49,603 nt of DNA, taken from the NCBI RefSeq assembly GCF_001194135.2, contig NC_069000.1, positions 13,786,856 through 13,836,458 of the forward strand. The letters are read 5' to 3'. Below are positions 1,405 through 44,160 of the stretch, piece by piece; the first letter of the stretch is position 1, and every line of letters begins with the position of its first letter. A program made the position numbers and the translations under genes. The notes under the pieces are model-generated. The model saw only the letters and a list, made by a program, of their open reading frames with translations. It did no database searches and had not been told where the DNA came from. The stretch is from Octopus bimaculoides. Its lineage: Eukaryota.

Positions 1405-1714
1405 CATAGGCATGGCTGTGTGGTAAGAAGCTTGCTTTTCAACCACATGGTGGCAGATTCAGTCCTACAGCATGGGATCTTGGGCAAGTGTCTTCTATAG
1501 TCTCAGGCTGACCAGAGCCTTGTGAGTGGAATTGGTGGCCAGAAACTGAAAGAAGCCCATCAGTGGTTGTGTGGTAAGTAGCTTGCTTACCAACCACATG
1601 GTTCCAGGTTCAATCCCACTGCATGGCACATTGGGCAAATGTCTTCTACTATAGCCTTGAGCCAACCAAAGCCTTGTGAGTGGATTTGGTTGACGGAAAC
1701 TGAAAGAAGCCCGT
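1405..1714 (+). mobile_element. Two tandem tRNA-derived SINE heads
   Basis: Two consecutive ~155-bp similar units (GGCTGTGTGGTAAGAAGCTTGCT..AACCACATGG.. and GGTTGTGTGGTAAGTAGCTTGCT..AACCACATGG..), each ending in GAAACTGAAAGAAGCCC. The same family recurs at about 39270-39390 (-), 41798-41940 (-) and 43585-43696 (+). Confidence 0.75.
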
Positions 1715-2399: not shown

Positions 2400-3620
2400 T
2401 ATGCAGGGTACTGACATAAAACTACAGCACTTAATGACAATCATGCAATGTATATGCAGTGAGTTTGCTCCAGAGAAAATGTCAAACCAACAGGAAAACA
2501 TAATTCCATGAGATAAGAAGATTTTAATAGCACGATGAACAAAAATATCAAATCATCTAAATGGGTCTCTAAAAAATAGTGAGGAATCCTGTCTTAAACA
2601 AGCACTGTCTGAAGTTGAAAGTGAACTAGAGCACAGCCTGTGAAATGGAGAGTGCTGAAAAAAGAAGCCTCAGCTGTAAAAAATGTAAGGACAAACTTTG
2701 CTATAGATTTACAAAAGAGTTGCTTATGTAGAGTACAAGATAGAGTCATTGTTCAAAGGAAATGGCTCACTGACTGCAAACTCCCAAAGGATAAGTGAAA
2801 TACTGAATATGCAATACAAAAGTGTTTTTATATCTCTGTTGGGACACTTGCAAATAAATATGCTGAACAAGTTCTTTGATGCTACAGTTCTATACAAATG
2901 AATGGCAATTATCAAGATAGAGGAATCTAATACGATATCAACCAAGTGCAAAGAGGCCTTAGCAAGATCACTGCAGATTCTCTTCCAAGGCTACCTTGCA
3001 AGTGGTAGACTACTTGAACATTAAAGAGGAGCATAATATATCCTATTCATAAAGGAGGAAGCAGAGAAGATGCTAAAAATTATAGGCCTATCACTGTAGC
3101 CTCATGTCAACAAATTCATGGAACAAATTGTGAGGAGGAAGTTGATCAGTTCCTCAAAGATAATAACTTGCTCCTTGACAGCCAGCCTAGCTTCCACTCA
3201 GAAAAAAGCTGCTTTACATAGCTTCTGCATCATTATGACTGAATACTGAAACAACTTATAAATCACTCAAACATGGATGTGGTATATCTCAACCTTGCAA
3301 AGGCCTTTGATAAGATTGATCATGGGATCATACATCACAAACAGTGAAGACTCTGCACGGTTGGAAAACTGAGAGAGTGGTTACATGACTTCTGAAAAGA
3401 CAGAAACCAGTGGAGCCCTCTTCAGGGTAGCATGAACAGGGAGTGAAATGTCTCAGGGAGCTGTCTTGGTCTACTGTTGTTTATGATGCCCCTCTCAGAC
3501 ATACCATCTGACATACCCAACTCTTACAAGCTATGCCAAGGACACAAAAGTAGATCAAGCAGTCAAGAATCCTCTTCTAACGTTAATCTTCTACTAAAAG
3601 ACCAAGTCATATGTACACAG
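2400..3620 (+). mobile_element. Degenerate CR1-like non-LTR retrotransposon, reverse transcriptase region
   Basis: Interrupted translation contains PIHKGGSREDAKNYRPI (about 3042-3092) and MDVVYLNLAKAFDKIDHGI (about 3273-3330). These match the K..NYRPISL and D.VYLDF.KAFD.V.H motifs of CR1/L2 RT domains 1-3. Multiple stops and frameshifts. Confidence 0.85.
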
Positions 3621-3929
3621 CAAAAAGTACACTGGACAGCTACAAACATTTATAATGTTGCTTGAGACGCATCTGATGTGCTGTTGAAACAGCTATAGAT
3701 TTGATTATCACATTATAAGCAATGTTTGTTGCTTTCGATATGGGACACACTGTACTTGATGCATTGATGAATAAAATTTATTGATCAATTGTCAAGTCAT
3801 CTGTATTTTCTATACAAACCATGCTTATGTTAGAGACTGACTAACCGTGTTTTACTTCAATCACTCAACTAATTGACATATATATTGTATACATAGATAT
3901 GTATATTTTAAAGATTTATATATATATGA

Positions 3930-4167: not shown

Positions 4168-4938
4168 CGTGGCTGTAATCTTTTCCAAAAAACATGTCTC
4201 TCTTTCTCTCTCAATGGGGAAGTATTTCATTGCCTGGAAACAGGTTGGCATCAGAATGGACATCTGGTCTTAGAAAATCTGTCTCAATAAGCTGCATCTG
4301 ACCCTTACAAAACCATGGGAAAATGTATGTTAAAAAGACGATGTCGATGTTTATGATATTTATATGCATGTCTGTATTTGTGTATGTCTATTGTGTCCGT
4401 GAGGAAATTTGTATGTGTATGTCTATCCTTTGCTTTCCCTCTTTCTTTTGTATGTGGTATCACTATTCTATGCTGCCACCACAGGGCTGAATCTCAGTTT
4501 TTTTACAATTATTCCTCTCCTTCTTGTTCCTCATTGATAAGCTCTGTTCTATTTAGTCTTTATTGTTTCTTTCTTCCTTATTGTCATCTGTTTCCTTCTT
4601 TCCTTCCCACTCTCCCCGCTCCCACCTCTGTGGCTATCTATTTCCCTCTCTCCCTTCTTTTCCGTCCCTCCCTCTCTCTGTTTAGCAGAAAACTCAATTA
4701 ATGTAGGACTAATACAGAGAGTCAAATTCTGTGGATGCAATTTCAAAATTATGGTCAGTGCCAAATGTAGTCTTTTATTCTAGAGTTTGTTATAGATGTT
4801 ATTGCCTCATCAGTGTCGTGGAAAAGGAAGTCTTTCCACGTGCTCACATTTTGATCTGGTTAACTAACGGGATTTACTCCATTGAAATTGATTCCATCAT
4901 ATTTGCATAGCTTCCAGATTCTTGCAGGAAGAAAGTCA

Positions 4939-4940
4939 TT

Positions 4941-4974
<34 letters not shown>

Positions 4975-5150
4975 CCATCATCCTTTAACATCTGTTTTCC
5001 GTGCTGGCATGGGCTGGACAGTTTGATCAGAGCTGGTAAGCTGGAGAGCTGCACTATGGTTCCAGTCTGATTTAGCTTGGTTTCTATGGCTGGATGCCCT
5101 TCCTAACACCAACCACTTTACAGCATGTGCTGAATACTTTTATTGAGGCA
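4939..5150 (-). mobile_element. (GAT)n-tailed retroposon (RTE-type 3' end) SINE-like copy
   Basis: A (CAT)n tract followed by TTTAAC.TC.GTTTTCC.TGCT.GCATGG is shared with copies at 41485-41760, 43110-43350 and 42170-42230, and in the opposite orientation at about 2010-2050, 45225-45275 and 47650-47700. Confidence 0.7.
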
Positions 5151-5243
5151 CCTCCATAGTGTTATTCAATATTGTTAAAACCTAGATAGTTTAACCTCCC
5201 TATAATGACCTCTGCAGAAATTCACTTTTACAATGAAGACAAC

Positions 5244-5815
5244 AAATGCACCAGACGGTTTCCAAAAAAATCATTTACCAAGGAAACCCAAACCAGTGAA
5301 ATAGCTAGCACCAGAAGATGGAAGCTTCTAAACGTTGATTGGACAGCATGGAATTGACAAAAAATGAACAGTTCTTCACTACCCAATCCTGAACATGACA
5401 TTCAATGTGCACATCAATCTTGAGTTTTTCAATGCTGTAAAGTTCATCAAATATGTTATGAAGGGCTCTGATATCATATTTGCACTCACACAGCAAAACT
5501 GCTGCGATGAAGTTCCCAATTCCAGTAAAATCAATGCATTAGAAGTAATGCAACTTTCTGGCACTTTTGTTCCTTTCTTATTAATGAAAATACTCCATAT
5601 CCAACCACTTGTTGTCCGCTTGGAAAATAGATAATGGGTTTACTTCACTCTAGCAATTGTTACACAGAAAGCACAAAATTTGAAGTCCACAAATCTTATA
5701 GCCTGCATATTTCAACTTGTACTAATACGACCCCTTTGAAGAAAGCGTTGTTGTACCATCAGCTTTCATTTTACTATAAATGGAACAACAAATAATGGAA
5801 TCAAAGAAAACAAAG
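5244..5815 (+). mobile_element. Degenerate Helitron Rep/helicase fragment
   Basis: Reads KCTRRFPKK..KETQTSE, then TFNVHINLEFFNAVKFIKYVMKGSD (5395 ORF; cf. Helitron FNAHINVE.C.SV.SIKY..KY..KG.D), then HIQPLVVRLEN and ALLYHQL..YY.W. These are in the order expected for Helitron Rep, with frameshifts. Confidence 0.8.
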
Positions 5816-5971: not shown

Positions 5972-6091
5972 TGAAGTTTGCATCACTTATAGAGAGACAT
6001 GCTTTAAACTTGGGTTGCAACATAGTCTGAAGTTTGCATCACTTATAGAGAAACATGTTTTAAATTTGGGTTGCAACATAGTCTGAAGTTT
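5972..6091. repeat. 56-bp tandem duplication (2 units plus an 8-bp remnant)
   Basis: 5972-6027 and 6028-6083 differ at about 3 positions; TGAAGTTT starts again at 6084. Confidence 0.9.
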
Positions 6092-6643
6092 CTGTATCTC
6101 AAGCATCCAAGGGTCTTAGTGTTCTTTTCACCACATGGTTAAAATACTGTTAACCATTCAATGCACTTAGCTTTAGCTCAAGTATGACAATGATCTTGCC
6201 TGAGGATTTCAGTCATCAACCTCAACAGATATACCCCAGCAGGAAAATAGGGTATACAGATGAAATGTATAACGTAACCAAAGGTCAGAGTGTATTAGTA
6301 AGCAACTTAATCAGAATCACTCAATTGGCCTTCCTTTGGATGTGGTCTGTGATAACTATGTGAGTAGTATCAGTGCTATATCAGATATGAGAGCAGAACT
6401 CTATTGTCAAGTTCAGCTAAGCTTTAAAGAAAAGTACTAGATTGGGGAGCTGAAATATCTTCTTGCTTGATAATACAAAGGCATTCACAAATCTAATATG
6501 ATTTATATAGTAAATATTTTTGTCATATAAAGGACTATTTGCAATGTATTATTTGAGACATTTTGAATTCCCATCTAGTTTTTATTAGTGAAAATTGAGA
6601 CTTTAAAACTTATGTCTAATTTTTTGTTTGTTTTATTTTTCAG

Positions 6644-7458
6644 ATAATGTTAAATATGGTCTTGGGCCGCTCACAGAAGATAGTACGCAAACAGTAGCCC
6701 CAATTCTACAAGATGCTGCAACTCAAACAATTGAAACCAAGCCTGAATATGTTGAGCCAACCAGATTCCGAGATGTGGGAACAGTTCCACGCACACCAAG
6801 TGTTACAAAGCCGATTACTCAGGATGCTGCAACTATGACAGCAAGTGTGAGAACCAAAGATATTTCCATCAGTGCCAAGTTACAAACACACGACATTGCA
6901 GTGGCAGCTGATTTCAAATTACCTGAACGACCACCTGTTGCTCAAACAATCAGAAAAATGGAAATGAGTTCTAAATCAGTCTGTCACAAACGCAACACTG
7001 CAACATCACCTGTCAGATTTTACGAATATATGAAACCAGCTGTTATAACACATGAAGTGTCTGTTGGTCCGAGCCTTAGAACGCGTACTTTTGGTGTCGG
7101 TGAATACTATTTCCGGACTCATGAAATTGGAATGCAAACAGACAGAGATATCCCAGACATCATAGAACCCTCTAGACGACTATTTGATGAAACTCCTCTA
7201 ATGAATCGGCTTACAGTTGCAGCAGGAAGAAAAAGAAAATCACAATCAACGGATGAAGTTACTAAACTAGAACTTGATACTTTGGTTGCTGATAAACATA
7301 GAATTGAAGCTGAGACTAATTTATATAAAATGGAGAAAAAACGAATAGAGGCTCAACTGGCTTACTATGGTGTAGACTCTCAAAGAGTGGAAGCACAGAA
7401 ACGATATCATCAGCTTAAGATAAAGAAATTAGAACGAGAAATGGCTTTACGAGAATGA
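6644..7458 (+). CDS. Terminal coding exon (~271 aa) of an uncharacterised protein: TQT-motif-rich disordered region, basic NLS-like RKRK and C-terminal coiled coil
   Basis: 815 nt open frame in otherwise ORF-poor AT-rich DNA. Strong acceptor TTTTTGTTTGTTTTATTTTTCAG ends at 6643 (phase 1, G|AT=Asp); TGA at 7456-7458; AATAAA at 7536 and 7559. The TTG start in the ORF track lies in the polypyrimidine tract and is not real. Upstream exons not identified. Confidence 0.85.
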
Positions 7459-7535: not shown

Positions 7536-7564
7536 AATAAAAAGAAAAAAGAAGAAAGAATAAA
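7536..7564 (+). promoter_or_regulatory. Putative polyadenylation signals of the TQT-rich exon
   Basis: AATAAA at 7536-7541 and 7559-7564, 80-100 nt after the stop, followed by T-rich sequence. Common by chance in AT-rich DNA. Confidence 0.45.
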
Positions 7565-22823: not shown

Positions 22824-23341
22824 GAAGGTACAACAAGATGAAGAAGTAAATGTAAGTCTGAAGATGGAGACAGAAAATAGGAGTGGAAGTATCCACAGTG
22901 AATAAAAGCAGCAGAGAGTAAACTGTGGGTTTGGATCAAAAATGGTTGTTCAAAATGAACAGATAAAAGCAATATTTTTATTAAAATATATTAAAATTGG
23001 AATTTTTAAGATTTTACTTTCATTCTAGATTAATCCAAAAGGTTGTTTAGAGTTTTGATTACATATATATATAGAAACTTGTATTAACATTGTAAGATAT
23101 ATGTGTATGCCCTTTAAATCAAGTTCCAATTGAACAAGACTCTCCTAATAAAGAGACAAGATCTTTTGTTAACATTCAAATTACAATTTTAAATAATATG
23201 ATTTTCTTTCATTAATGTGTTGTCTGTCTTGCATTGCACCACTTATTGGTCAGATTGGAAAAAAATTTAGATCAGTTGTTTCTTATCTTTCTCTGAGATA
23301 TTTCTGAAGCTTATTTCATAAACATTTAATAAAATCATAAT

Positions 23342-23485
23342 AATTGCAGCATGGAAGGTGTTTATAAGCCATTTAAAAACACACAAAAACAGTTAGATTC
23401 ACTTCAACATTTAAATTTAATTTGTCAAAATATTTTCGTCACTTTGAAACTACGACCTGTTCACTGACAAAATTCTGTGCTGCAT
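23342..23485. repeat. Dispersed repeat, copy 2 (inverted relative to 2128-2273)
   Basis: Its reverse complement aligns along its length to 2128-2273; several differences are CpG transitions. Confidence 0.85.
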
Positions 23486-39268: not shown

Positions 39269-39390
39269 CAACAGGCTTCTTTCAGTTTCTGTCTACCAAA
39301 TCCACTCACAAGGCTTTGGTCGGCCCAAGGCTAAAGTAGAAGATACTTGCCCAAGGTGCCACACAGTGGGACTGAACCTGGAACCACACA
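38990..39390 (-). mobile_element. Full-length tRNA-derived SINE (head, microsatellite linker, body)
   Basis: The head at about 39270-39390 matches the 1405 family in reverse. The body at about 38990-39130 matches 43975-44140 in reverse (TAGAATAAGTACTAGGCT..GACTAAA..GTGCTC). Confidence 0.75.
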
Positions 39391-41482: not shown

Positions 41483-41484
<2 letters not shown>

Positions 41485-41528
<44 letters not shown>

Positions 41529-41760
41529 GTTTAACGTCCGTTTTCCATGCTAGCATGGATTGGACAGTTTGAACGGGGTCTGGGAAGTCAGGAGGCTGCA
41601 CCAGGCTCCAGTCTGATCTGGTAGTATTTCTACAGCTGGATGCCCTTCCTTACGCCAACCATTCCATGAGTGTAGTGGGTGCTTTTTACGTGCCACCGGC
41701 ACAGGGGCCAGAGGAGGCTGGCAACAGCCATGATCAGTTGGTGCTTTTTACATGCAACTG
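41485..41760 (-). mobile_element. (GAT)n-tailed SINE-like retroposon
   Basis: Long (CAT)n tract plus CGTTTAACGTCCGTTTTCCATGCTAGCATGG; same family as 4939-5150. Confidence 0.75.
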
Positions 41761-42028
41761 GCACAGAACTTTTGTATATCTATCTATCTATCTATTAGGC
41801 TTCTTTCAGTTTCTGTCTATCACATCCACTCACAAGGTTTTGGTCAGCCTGAAGACATTTGCCCAAAGTGTCATGCAGTGGAACAGAACCTAGAACCATG
41901 TGGTTGGTAAACAAGCTTCTTACGACTCAGCCACACCTGTTGAGCTTTTTCCATTCTATTTTCTGAACATTTTTACTTTGATGATAAATAAGGTGTATAA
42001 AATGTATATTTTGTTTTACTTAAACCAG

Positions 42029-43050: not shown

Positions 43051-43584
43051 TTGAACATTGTAACAAACAGATGCCCTATTCAAGAGTAATTTGGTGAACT
43101 TGATTACTTATCATCAACATCATCATCATCACTTAATGTCCATCATGTTCCATACTAGCATGGGTGGGACGCTTTCACAAGAGCCGGCCAGGCCAAAGCT
43201 TGCACCAGACTGTTTTGGCAGGATTTCTACAACTGGATGCTCTTCCAAATGCCAACCAATTTACAGGGTGTACTGGGTGTTTTTACACAACACCGGTGCA
43301 GGTGTATTTATGTGGCACCAGTACAGGTGCTTTTTGCATGACACCAACACGCATGAGTCCTCGAGGTTAGGAATGCTCAACTGGAGAGGGATGCACAGGA
43401 CAGCCTGAGTGCAAGGACAAAACTACTTAACCACACAGCCATGCCTGCACTTATTTAACATAAAGAACTAATTTTAATTGAATTACAATTTTATTATCAA
43501 ACAAAAATCAAATGTTTTTATGTTTTTAAATGATATACCTTTTAACATGAAAGACAATTAGATCTTAAATTTGATAAATTATCA

Positions 43585-44160
43585 TGGTCCAAGGTTCAGT
43601 CCCACTGCATGGCCCCTTGGGAAAGTGTCTTCTACTATAGCCTCAGGCTGACCAAAGCCTAGTAAATGGATTTGGTACACAGAAACTGAAAGAAGCGGCG
43701 AGCTGGTAGAAACGTTACCCTGCCGGGCGAAATGCTTAGCAGTATTTCATCTGCCGTCACGTTCGGAGTTCAAATTCTGCCAAGGTCGACTTTGCCTTTC
43801 ATCCTTTCGGGGTCGATAAATTAAATACCAGTTACGCACTGGGCTCAATGTAATCGACTTAATCCCTTTGTCTGTCCTTGTTTGTCCCCTCTATATTTAG
43901 CCCCTTGTGGGCAATATAGAAATAAGAAACTGAAAGAAGCCTATCATATATGTGTGCGTCTTTGTGTCCACTTCCACTGCTTGACAACTGGTGTTGGTGT
44001 ATTTACATACCTGTAACTTGGCAGTTTGGCAAATATAACTGATAGAATAAGTACTAGGCTCTAAAAAAAATTAATACTAGGGTTGATACATTCGACTAAA
44101 AATTCTTCAAGGTGGTGCTCCAGTATGGCTGCAGTCTAATGGCTGAAACATATAAAGATA
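43585..44160 (+). mobile_element. Older SINE interrupted by a younger SINE (43697-43924)
   Basis: The 16-bp direct repeat AGAAACTGAAAGAAGC at 43681-43696 and 43925-43940 flanks an inserted CpG-richer SINE; the host SINE body resumes afterwards. Confidence 0.85.

What the first reader, a model, noticed from the sequence alone, without database searches (positions are those of the whole stretch)
6676..7143. Orphan exon encoding a multivalent array of LC8 (dynein light chain)-type TQT motifs
Seen: about 10 short, regularly spaced motifs of the form [DE]-x-x-[TVM]-x-[TG] in a Thr/Pro/Ser-rich, likely disordered region: EDSTQT, DAATQT, RDVGTV, DAATMT, KDISIS, HDIAVA, RNTATS, HEVSVG, RTFGVG and EIGMQTD. 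Two are near-duplicates at DNA level (CAAGATGCTGCAACTCAAACA 6709-6729; CAGGATGCTGCAACTATGACA 6820-6840), suggesting expansion by internal duplication. Established: the LC8/DYNLL hub binds TQT-anchored motifs, and multivalent arrays occur in ASCIZ/ATMIN and KANK-type linkers. Inference: an apparently uncharacterised multivalent LC8 client, combining strong and weak sites with RKRK and a dimerising coiled coil; possibly a graded LC8-occupancy sensor. I do not recognise it as ATMIN or KANK.
Basis: partly seen in the sequence, partly recalled or inferred. Interest (0 to 1): 0.7.

Follow-up and report, generated by a model that had tools for sequence, protein, structure and literature searches.

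The report
Putative multi-site LC8-binding terminal exon
This is the last coding exon of an unidentified gene in an AT-rich, octopus-like genome; it encodes a floppy tail with one very good and several weaker docking motifs for the dynein light chain LC8, followed by a coiled coil, so it is probably a new but unproven member of a well-known class of LC8 client proteins.

Summary
All ten listed peptide strings and the DNA near-duplicate are at the stated coordinates. They lie in the only convincing coding feature of the 49.6-kb window, a 3'-terminal exon (6644-7458, +) with a strong acceptor, a coding GC1>GC2>GC3 gradient and AATAAA signals.

I rebuilt an LC8 scoring matrix from 79 published binders and 32 non-binders.
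- QDAATQTI scores as a strong site. Its core is that of the 0.4 µM CHICA motif IDAATQTE, and it shares AATQTI with 53BP1.
- QDAATMTA and HEIGMQTD are intermediate.
- TEDSTQTV has a poor context despite its TQT.
- The other six lack an anchor. They resemble the proven non-canonical Pak1 (RDVATSPI) and GCOM1 (REIGVG) sites and the weak KANK1 anchors.

LC8-type flanks are enriched over shuffles: 8 windows against 1.3 expected. The array is an old duplication of a four-motif cassette. AlphaFold2 predicts residues 1-199 as disordered and 202-269 as helical, with an unbroken heptad register.

No homologue, Pfam family or structure match was found, but the libraries appear blind to cephalopod sequence. 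LC8 binding, the number of sites, expression and gene identity are untested. The "occupancy sensor" idea has no support. Verdict: a plausible new member of a known kind, of modest interest.

The parts
6613..6643 (+). Polypyrimidine tract and AG splice acceptor (GTCTAATTTTTTGTTTGTTTTATTTTTCAG). The exon starts at 6644 in phase 1: two bases complete a codon begun in the previous exon.
   Evidence: Read directly. The open frame upstream of 6644 is only the pyrimidine tract, with no in-frame ATG before Met63.
6644..7458 (+). 3'-terminal coding exon. It encodes 270 complete codons (6646-7455) and the TGA stop at 7456-7458.
   Evidence: A 283-codon open frame has a chance expectation of about 1e-5 for the whole window. 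GC1/GC2/GC3 are 0.53/0.42/0.25, against flanks of 0.24-0.34. It is the longest clean open frame of the window by a factor of more than 2. It has no second copy in the window and no flanking terminal repeats.
6673..6696 (+). Site 1, TEDSTQTV: canonical TQT anchor in a poor context
   Evidence: Combined score 1.2. 97% of binders and 81% of non-binders score at least this high. Double acid at -4/-3 and hydrophobic +2 are published non-binder features.
6709..6732 (+). Site 2, QDAATQTI: strong predicted LC8 site
   Evidence: Combined score 22.8, above 89% of known binders and above all 32 non-binders. It shares DAATQT with CHICA IDAATQTE (0.4 µM) and AATQTI with 53BP1 VSAATQTI.
6769..6792 (+). Site 3, RDVGTVPR: non-canonical, Pak1-like (RDVATSPI)
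   Evidence: Best flank-only score of the protein, 10.0. Pak1 TPTRDVATSPI is a structurally proven LC8 site that LC8Pred cannot predict.
6820..6843 (+). Site 4, QDAATMTA: TMT anchor, a paralogue of site 2
   Evidence: Combined score 15.8. 65% of binders and 12% of non-binders score at least this high. TMT anchors bind in myosin Va and Drosophila ASCIZ, and one is noted in human ASCIZ.
6856..6879 (+). Site 5, KDISISAK: anchorless candidate
   Evidence: Flank score 6.35. It cannot be scored by TQT-trained matrices. By analogy only.
6889..6912 (+). Site 6, HDIAVAAD: anchorless candidate
   Evidence: Flank score 3.3. It aligns with HEIGMQTD in the internal repeat. The KANK1 VMA anchor is comparable.
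6991..7014 (+). Site 7, RNTATSPV: Pak1-like, with the same ATSP core as RDVATSPI
   Evidence: Flank score 7.5. It aligns with RDVGTVP in the internal repeat. Pak1 motif.
7051..7074 (+). Site 8, HEVSVGPS: GCOM1/GRINL1A-like (REIGVG)
   Evidence: GCOM1 TEVETREIGVG is a proven LC8 site missed by LC8Pred. It aligns with QDAATMT in the internal repeat.
7084..7107 (+). Site 9, RTFGVGEY: VGE anchor, like a predicted KANK1 site and GCOM1
   Evidence: KANK1 VGE and IGC anchors. Low matrix score. By analogy only.
7120..7143 (+). Site 10, HEIGMQTD: intermediate site of the nNOS/GKAP/53BP1 'IGIQT/VD' type
   Evidence: Combined score 11.9. 82% of binders and 31% of non-binders score at least this high. Compare LSIGIQVD, NNIGIQTM and RHIDIQTD.
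6769..6927 (+). Internal repeat, copy A (aa 42-94): four motifs, sites 3-6
   Evidence: Smith-Waterman score 48 against copy B. Shuffle mean is 29.6 and P is about 0.007. No DNA-level similarity is left.
6991..7158 (+). Internal repeat, copy B (aa 116-171): four motifs, sites 7-10
   Evidence: The motifs align one to one: RDVGTVP/RNTATSP, ITQDAATMT/ITHEVSVGP, RTKDISIS/RTRTFGVG, THDIAVAAD/THEIGMQTD.
7174..7239 (+). Linker with RRLF (7174-7185, like a cyclin RxL docking motif), TP, and the basic patch RKRK (7228-7239, like a nuclear localisation signal)
   Evidence: Read directly. The functional assignments come from my own knowledge of these short motifs and were not tested.
7249..7455 (+). C-terminal helical coiled-coil domain (aa 202-270)
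   Evidence: AlphaFold2 helices 202-241 and 245-269, with 10-residue block mean pLDDT of 74-93 over aa 211-270. One heptad register runs unbroken through the domain, with d positions L,I,Y,I,Y,V,H,L. The only PDB sequence hits are weak coiled coils, a myosin rod chimera and FosB, at E 0.5-2.6.
7536..7564 (+). Two AATAAA polyadenylation signals (7536, 7559), 78 and 101 nt after the stop
5218..5295 (+). Speculative upstream 78-nt cassette exon, phase 1-1 (ctctgcag|AA...CAAACCA|gtgaaa), encoding ..RRFPKKSFTKETQT
   Evidence: FTKETQTS is the best LC8-matrix hit in the six-frame translation of the whole window, at 16.7; its combined score is 24.6. It joins in frame to 6644, giving ...KETQTNNVKYG. 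The donor site is weak and there are no transcript data.

Best explanation
The span is the core of the 3'-terminal exon (6644-7458) of a protein-coding gene whose earlier exons lie mostly or wholly outside the window. The exon encodes about 190 disordered residues carrying an array of LC8 (DYNLL) docking motifs. A basic patch and a coiled coil of about 70 residues follow.

Proposed mechanism: the coiled coil pairs two chains in parallel and in register. LC8 dimers then clamp equivalent motifs on the two chains by beta-strand addition. They would nucleate at the strong QDAATQTI site, and at FTKETQT if the candidate upstream exon is real. The intermediate sites (QDAATMTA, HEIGMQTD) and the weak Pak1-, GCOM1- and KANK1-like sites would then fill cooperatively, helped by linkers of only 3-4 residues. 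The result would be a stiff 'beads-on-a-string' duplex, as in Nup159, ASCIZ and the KANK1 L2 linker.

Shown here: the exon anatomy, the motif content and its enrichment, the cassette duplication, and the disorder and helix predictions. Inferred: LC8 binding, the number of occupied sites, parallel dimerisation, and any cellular role.
For: - Exon reality.
- Motif quality, using a matrix rebuilt from the 79 binders and 32 non-binders of Jespersen et al. 2019 (leave-one-out AUC 0.84): QDAATQTI outscores 89% of binders and every non-binder; QDAATMTA and HEIGMQTD are intermediate.
- Flank-only LC8 preferences are enriched, 8 windows vs 1.26 in shuffles.
- The exon holds 4 of the window's 29 matrix hits in 0.45% of its octamers.
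- Non-TQT sites have experimentally proven precedents: Pak1 RDVATSPI and GCOM1 REIGVG, TMT anchors, and KANK1 anchors TST, IGC, VNT, VMA and VGE that bind only cooperatively.
- Linker lengths of 3-26 residues fall inside the 1-41 range seen in ASCIZ.
- The motif register is kept between two old cassette copies that no longer resemble each other at DNA level.
- AlphaFold2 gives pLDDT below 50 for aa 1-199 and confident helices for 202-269, with a continuous heptad register.
- LC8 sites next to coiled coils are a recurrent arrangement.
Against: - There are no binding data, and no complex prediction was possible with these tools.
- Only one site passes as a confident binder.
- TEDSTQTV looks like a non-binder.
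- Six sites are invisible to the matrix, and they were partly picked by eye, so they are post hoc.
- Published non-binders with perfect TQT anchors show that the false-positive rate of motif reading is high.
- Expression of the exon is not demonstrated.
- Disorder rests on a single-sequence AlphaFold2 run.
Confidence: 0.55

Rival explanations
1. The protein is a low-valency LC8 client. Only QDAATQTI, and perhaps QDAATMTA or HEIGMQTD, binds LC8 and helps the coiled coil dimerise, as in Swallow or myosin Va. The other 'motifs' are diverged remnants of the duplicated cassette in a Thr/Val-rich disordered region and do not bind LC8.
For: Only one site is a confident binder, and six score about zero or below. 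Duplication by itself produces look-alike strings.
Against: Flank-only LC8 preferences are strongly enriched. The anchorless sites match proven Pak1 and GCOM1 sites and the KANK1 anchors. The clusters with 3-4-residue linkers are the geometry in which weak sites are known to be filled cooperatively.
Confidence: 0.25
2. The repeated T-[HQK]-[DE]-hydrophobic-small-[TVIM] unit is a module for a different partner or a beta-forming structural repeat, and the two TQTs are incidental.
For: The shared core [DE][VIAL][GSA][TIVM] occurs 7 times vs 0.3 expected, independently of the anchor. AlphaFold2 draws low-confidence beta-hairpins at aa 67-76 and 132-151. No LC8 evidence exists beyond sequence.
Against: D/E at -4 and T/V/I at -1 are exactly the LC8 flank rules. 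DAATQT is identical to a sub-micromolar LC8 motif. No Pfam repeat family or fold match exists. I know of no other hub with this motif; that rests on my own knowledge.
Confidence: 0.1
3. The feature is not a functional exon: an unexpressed or decaying open frame, a retro-copy, or a piece of a mobile element.
For: There are no transcript data and no homologue or annotated protein in any library searched. The introns around it are full of LINE and SINE debris.
Against: The 283-codon open frame in 31% GC DNA has a chance expectation of about 1e-5. It has a coding GC1>GC2>GC3 gradient, a textbook acceptor and AATAAA signals. It is single-copy in the window with no terminal repeats. The libraries also failed on a LINE reverse-transcriptase control, so their silence is uninformative.
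Confidence: 0.07
4. It is the ordinary last exon of an already known, conserved gene, for example a molluscan ASCIZ/ATMIN or another catalogued LC8 client, unrecognisable here only because the conserved domains sit in upstream exons outside the window.
For: Only 6.6 kb lies upstream in the window. ASCIZ keeps its LC8-binding domain in the C-terminal part and is said to be conserved across animals. Disordered tails evolve too fast for sequence searches.
Against: ASCIZ arrays run to the very C-terminus, with no coiled coil described. There is no C2H2 pattern on the + strand of the window. The KANK architecture ends in ankyrin repeats, not a coiled coil. There is no Pfam hit at E<=10.
Confidence: 0.12

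Closest known systems
Nup159 dynein-light-chain interacting domain (yeast)
   Same: Several LC8 (Dyn2) motifs sit in a disordered stretch that zips two chains into a rigid stack of five LC8 dimers. The array is followed by a C-terminal coiled coil; that detail is my recollection and was not checked here.
   Different: There is no sequence similarity. The Nup159 sites are QT-type and more uniform, and the protein is a nucleoporin with FG repeats. Here most sites are non-canonical and the rest of the protein is unknown.
KANK1 L2 linker
   Same: It is a dense array of individually weak, non-canonical anchors (TST, IGC, VNT, VMA, VGE) with short linkers that binds LC8 only cooperatively and becomes a rod. 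The VGE, VGP, VAA and ISA anchors here are of that style.
   Different: KANK ends in ankyrin repeats and has its coiled coil N-terminal to the linker. Here the protein ends in a coiled coil. KANK1 has at least 15 sites and no strong one, whereas here there is at least one CHICA-grade site.
ASCIZ/ATMIN LC8-binding domain
   Same: It has 7-11 sites of mixed strength, including TMT anchors, and linkers of 1-41 residues in a disordered C-terminal domain.
   Different: ASCIZ is a zinc-finger transcription factor whose array reaches the C-terminus. No zinc finger is visible here, and a coiled coil follows the array. The sensor function of ASCIZ cannot be transferred.
CHICA/FAM83D and 53BP1 LC8 sites
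   Same: QDAATQTI combines CHICA IDAATQTE (0.4 µM) and 53BP1 VSAATQTI. HEIGMQTD resembles 53BP1 NNIGIQTM.
   Different: The match is at motif level only. Those proteins have two or three sites and unrelated domain architectures, and homology is not implied.
Pak1 and GCOM1/GRINL1A non-canonical LC8 sites
   Same: RDVGTVP and RNTATSPV resemble RDVATSPI. HEVSVGP, RTFGVGE and HEIGMQ resemble REIGVG. Both reference sites are experimentally determined and missed by LC8Pred.
   Different: Those are single sites in otherwise unrelated proteins. The resemblance covers 5-6 of 8 residues and was not tested.

Membership tests
LC8/DYNLL client (TQT-type short linear motif) | Eight-residue motif with a [T/V/I]-Q-[T/V] anchor | tested here: met
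   Two TQT anchors (aa 14-16 and 26-28) and one MQT (aa 163-165), plus a TMT variant (aa 63-65).
LC8/DYNLL client (TQT-type short linear motif) | Flanks compatible with binding: polar or Asp at -4, no bulky residue at -2, no internal Pro, no stacked like charges, preferably P/D/E at +2 | tested here: met
   Met for QDAATQTI, which scores above all 32 non-binders. QDAATMTA and HEIGMQTD are intermediate. TEDSTQTV does not meet it.
LC8/DYNLL client (TQT-type short linear motif) | Motif lies in an intrinsically disordered segment | tested here: met
   AlphaFold2 pLDDT is below 50 for aa 1-199. This is a single-sequence model, so it is a proxy only.
LC8/DYNLL client (TQT-type short linear motif) | Direct binding to the LC8 dimer groove | not testable with these tools
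   Complex prediction with LC8 is not available here, and there is no wet-lab assay.
LC8/DYNLL client (TQT-type short linear motif) | Motif conserved in orthologues | not testable with these tools
   No relative was found in any library. A LINE reverse-transcriptase control from the window also found nothing.
Multivalent LC8 duplex scaffold (ASCIZ / Nup159 / KANK1 type) | Three or more functional sites on one chain, separated by short disordered linkers | tested here: inconclusive
   There are three sites with credible scores and up to ten candidates, with linkers of 3-26 residues. Function of the weak sites is inferred from precedents.
Multivalent LC8 duplex scaffold (ASCIZ / Nup159 / KANK1 type) | Stoichiometry of n LC8 dimers per two chains; beads-on-a-string particles | not testable with these tools
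   This needs ITC, SEC-MALS or negative-stain EM.
ASCIZ/ATMIN | N-terminal C2H2 zinc fingers | tested here: inconclusive
   There is no C2H2 pattern on the + strand of the window. However, only 6.6 kb lies upstream of the exon, and earlier exons may lie outside.
ASCIZ/ATMIN | LC8-binding domain forms the extreme C-terminus | tested here: not met
   Here about 105 residues follow the last motif, including a 70-residue coiled coil. The last dASCIZ site is at Q383 and its LC8-binding domain ends at residue 388.
KANK | C-terminal ankyrin-repeat domain after the L2 linker | tested here: not met
   The reading frame ends in a coiled coil and a stop at 7456-7458. There is no Pfam ankyrin hit.
bZIP transcription factor | Basic region with N-x2-AA-x2-[CS]-R followed by a leucine zipper | tested here: not met
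   No bZIP Pfam hit at E<=10. NRLTVAAGRKRK has the Ala pair out of register, by direct reading. The only support is a weak FosB hit at E=2.6.

The most novel reading that the evidence does not exclude
A lineage-restricted, undescribed LC8 client of very high valency (10-11 sites). Its array grew by duplicating a four-motif cassette that mixes a CHICA-grade TQT site with Pak1-, GCOM1- and KANK1-style anchors, all placed directly before a dimerising coiled coil. It would be a natural 'strong nucleator plus cooperative weak sites' rod former, among the most multivalent LC8 partners known.
Probability: 0.3. Interest if true: 0.55.

Novelty: new member of a known kind. Interest (0 to 1): 0.35.

Why it matters
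If confirmed, it would add an invertebrate example to the very short list of LC8 partners with more than five sites (ASCIZ, KANK1, Nup159). It combines in one chain every known anchor class: TQT, TMT, IQT-like, Pak1-like TSP and GCOM1-like VG. It also shows a visible duplication history. That makes it a compact natural test bed for two questions: how strong and weak sites cooperate, and how such arrays evolve. As it stands it is a sequence-based prediction in an unidentified gene, so its value is as a candidate for cheap binding tests rather than as a discovery.

Tried and rejected
- Pfam scan of the exon product at E<=10 gave nothing.
- Word-indexed search of 5.8 billion proteins at E<=0.01, and again at E<=10, gave nothing.
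- Full phmmer against 1.84 billion representatives gave nothing.
- PDB sequence search gave only weak coiled-coil noise.
- Foldseek of the AlphaFold2 model against PDB gave nothing below E=2.9.
- Exact-sequence look-ups of three possible ORF starts in public assemblies found none on record.
- A metagenome scan with back-translated peptides gave 109 pattern matches and no relative.
- A control search with the LINE reverse-transcriptase remnant of the same window also found nothing. I therefore treat all these negatives as uninformative about cephalopods, not as proof of orphan status.
- Pfam on the ten next-best open frames of the window gave nothing above threshold.
- Rfam on the window gave nothing.
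- Tandem-repeat finder on the exon found no array; only the A-rich 3' flank scored.
- The mobile-element origin was rejected for lack of terminal repeats or extra copies.
- bZIP, KANK and ASCIZ membership were considered and not supported (see Membership tests).
- MYZAP/GCOM1 orthology was considered because of the REIGVG-like sites. I dropped it because, as I recall and did not check, GCOM1's site follows its coiled coils. Nothing but the short motif matches.
- DNA-level alignment of the two four-motif cassettes found no residual similarity.
Full report
**What is in the sequence**

The window is AT-rich (22-37% GC in 2-kb bins) and carries N gaps and abundant (TA)n/(CA)n microsatellites. That fits a draft cephalopod-type genome, although the organism was not identified.

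The finding lies in a single open frame, 6607-7455. At 283 codons it is more than twice as long as any other non-repetitive open frame in the window.

The sequence GTCTAATTTTTTGTTTGTTTTATTTTTCAG|AT at 6613-6645 is a textbook acceptor. There is no in-frame ATG before residue 63, so the coding exon starts at 6644 in phase 1. The frame ends at TGA 7456-7458, and AATAAA follows at 7536 and 7559.

GC1/GC2/GC3 are 0.53/0.42/0.25, against 0.24-0.34 in the flanks. An open frame of this length is expected about 1e-5 times in the whole window. The exon has no second copy in the window and no flanking terminal repeats. I therefore take it as a genuine 3'-terminal coding exon, with the rest of the gene upstream and largely outside the window.

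**Check of the observation**

The two 21-mers match at 17/21, and the repeat finder extends them to 24 nt at 79% identity, 111 nt apart.

In composition-preserving shuffles of the first 180 residues:
- TQT is seen 2 times vs 0.11 expected (P=0.004).
- T[QM]T or MQT is seen 4 times vs 0.21 (never reached in 20,000 shuffles).

As a test that does not depend on patterns chosen by eye, I rebuilt a position-specific matrix from the 79 binders and 32 anchor-containing non-binders of Jespersen et al. 2019, Table S4.
- Using only positions -5 to -1, with no anchor, 8 windows score >=6 against 1.26 in shuffles (0 of 5,000).
- In a six-frame control of the entire window, 29 of 58,599 octamers reach 7.5. 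Four of them lie in the exon, where about 0.1 is expected.

**Quality of the individual sites**

The combined binder and non-binder score has a leave-one-out AUC of 0.84.

| Site | Combined score | Known binders scoring at least this | Non-binders scoring at least this |
|---|---|---|---|
| QDAATQTI | 22.8 | 11% | 0% |
| QDAATMTA | 15.8 | 65% | 12% |
| HEIGMQTD | 11.9 | 82% | 31% |
| TEDSTQTV | 1.2 | 97% | 81% |

- QDAATQTI shares its DAATQT core with CHICA IDAATQTE, described as one of the tightest known motifs at 0.4 µM. Its AATQTI is identical to 53BP1 VSAATQTI.
- QDAATMTA carries a TMT anchor. TMT anchors are validated in myosin Va and Drosophila ASCIZ, and one is noted in human ASCIZ.
- TEDSTQTV has acids at -4 and -3 and Val at +2, which are the features of published TQT non-binders.
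- The other six (RDVGTVPR, KDISISAK, HDIAVAAD, RNTATSPV, HEVSVGPS, RTFGVGEY) score about zero or below because they have no Q-type anchor. The proven sites of Pak1 (RDVATSPI, 4.9) and GCOM1 (REIGVGCD, 8.8) also score low. The literature states that LC8Pred cannot predict those two.
- RDVGTVP and RNTATSPV closely resemble the Pak1 site. HEVSVGP and RTFGVGE resemble the GCOM1 site and the IGC and VGE anchors of KANK1.

My grading is one strong site, two intermediate, one doubtful despite its TQT, and six that are possible only through multivalent cooperativity.

**Internal architecture**

A self-comparison shows that aa 42-94 align with aa 116-171 (score 48; shuffle mean 29.6; P about 0.007). 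The motifs correspond one to one:
- RDVGTVP / RNTATSP
- ITQDAATMT / ITHEVSVGP
- RTKDISIS / RTRTFGVG
- THDIAVAAD / THEIGMQTD

A shorter third copy also exists: aa 5-32 align with aa 45-71. The array is therefore a duplicated four-motif cassette. DNA similarity between the two large copies has vanished, so the duplication is old. The acidic -4 and beta-branched -1 positions have nevertheless been kept. This is weak, within-protein evidence of constraint.

Linkers between octamers are 4, 12, 9, 4, 3, 26, 12, 3 and 4 residues. That gives three tight clusters: sites 1-2, 4-6 and 8-10. These values fall within the 1-41 range documented for ASCIZ.

**The rest of the exon product**

AlphaFold2, run on the single sequence, gives pLDDT below 50 for residues 1-199. 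It gives helices at 202-241 and 245-269, with 10-residue block mean pLDDT of 74-93 over aa 211-270. One heptad register runs unbroken through both helices, with d positions L,I,Y,I,Y,V,H,L. This fits a continuous coiled coil.

Between the array and the coil lie RRLFDE, TP and RKRK. From my own knowledge, these look like a cyclin RxL docking site, a minimal CDK site and a nuclear localisation signal. None was tested.

**Mechanism proposed**

- The coiled coil holds two chains in register.
- LC8 dimers bind equivalent motifs on both chains, starting at the strong site.
- Short linkers and the bivalency created by the first LC8 and by the coil let the weak sites fill cooperatively.
- The disordered tail then stiffens into a stacked rod.

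This is what is documented for Nup159 (five dimers), ASCIZ (seven to eleven) and KANK1 L2 (at least fifteen sites that do not bind as isolated peptides). In ASCIZ that function depends on its being the transcription factor for the LC8 gene.

**Comparison with known families**

There is no Pfam family, no structure or fold relative, and no homologue in three large protein searches or in a metagenome scan. A control query made from the LINE reverse-transcriptase remnant at 2707-3218 also returned nothing. The libraries available here evidently do not cover this part of the tree, so 'orphan' cannot be concluded.

- KANK membership fails, because the protein ends in a coiled coil and not in ankyrin repeats.
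- ASCIZ membership fails on the position of the array. It is inconclusive on zinc fingers: none are on the + strand, but only 6.6 kb is available upstream.
- bZIP membership fails (and direct reading).

The exon works like the Nup159, ASCIZ and KANK1 class, but it cannot be filed in any of those families.

**A lead outside the given span**

The single best LC8-matrix hit in the six-frame translation of the window is FTKETQTS at 5274-5297 (+), 1.35 kb upstream on the same strand (score 16.7; combined score 24.6). It lies between ctctgcag| and |gtgaaa, which would define a 78-nt phase 1-1 cassette exon (5218-5295). That exon would join in frame to 6644, reading ...KKSFTKETQT-N-NVKYG.... The donor site is weak and there are no transcript data, so this remains a hypothesis. 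If it is real, it adds a second strong nucleating site.

**Verdict**

The feature is most likely a new, unverified member of the known class of multivalent LC8 clients. Its gene identity, expression and binding are all still to be shown. I rate the interest as modest.

Noticed in passing
window 5218-5295 (+): Possible 78-nt phase 1-1 cassette exon encoding ..RRFPKKSFTKETQT. FTKETQTS is the best LC8-matrix hit in the whole six-frame window, and it joins in frame to the terminal exon at 6644.
   Followed up: partly
window 7174-7239 (+): RRLFDE (like a cyclin RxL docking motif), an adjacent TP, and an RKRK basic patch lie between the motif array and the coiled coil. This hints at a nuclear or cell-cycle-regulated protein.
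   Followed up: no
window 5972-6083 (+): A 56-bp unit is duplicated in tandem at 95% identity in the intron just upstream of the exon.
   Followed up: no
window 2625-3662 (+): Frameshifted remnants of a LINE reverse transcriptase (..YPIHKGGSREDAKNYRPITV..). They gave no Pfam hit and no hit in the protein library, which I used as a coverage control.
   Followed up: partly
window 1413-1714, 39271-39386, 41798-41934, 43583-43696; also 4937-5115 and 41483-41661; also 2128-2276 and 23339-23485: Three interspersed short-repeat families (115-180 bp, 77-92% identity), SINE-like, in both orientations. None touches the exon.
   Followed up: partly
window about 580-880, 12.7 kb, 18.6 kb, 21 kb, 31.2-31.6 kb, 34.6-35.1 kb: Runs of N (assembly gaps), mostly next to (TA)n/(CA)n microsatellites. 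Part of the 6.6 kb upstream of the exon is therefore unread.
   Followed up: no
window 7460-49603: No other convincing coding exon, tRNA or Rfam RNA lies in the 42 kb downstream of the exon. The ten longest clean open frames gave no Pfam family above threshold.
   Followed up: partly
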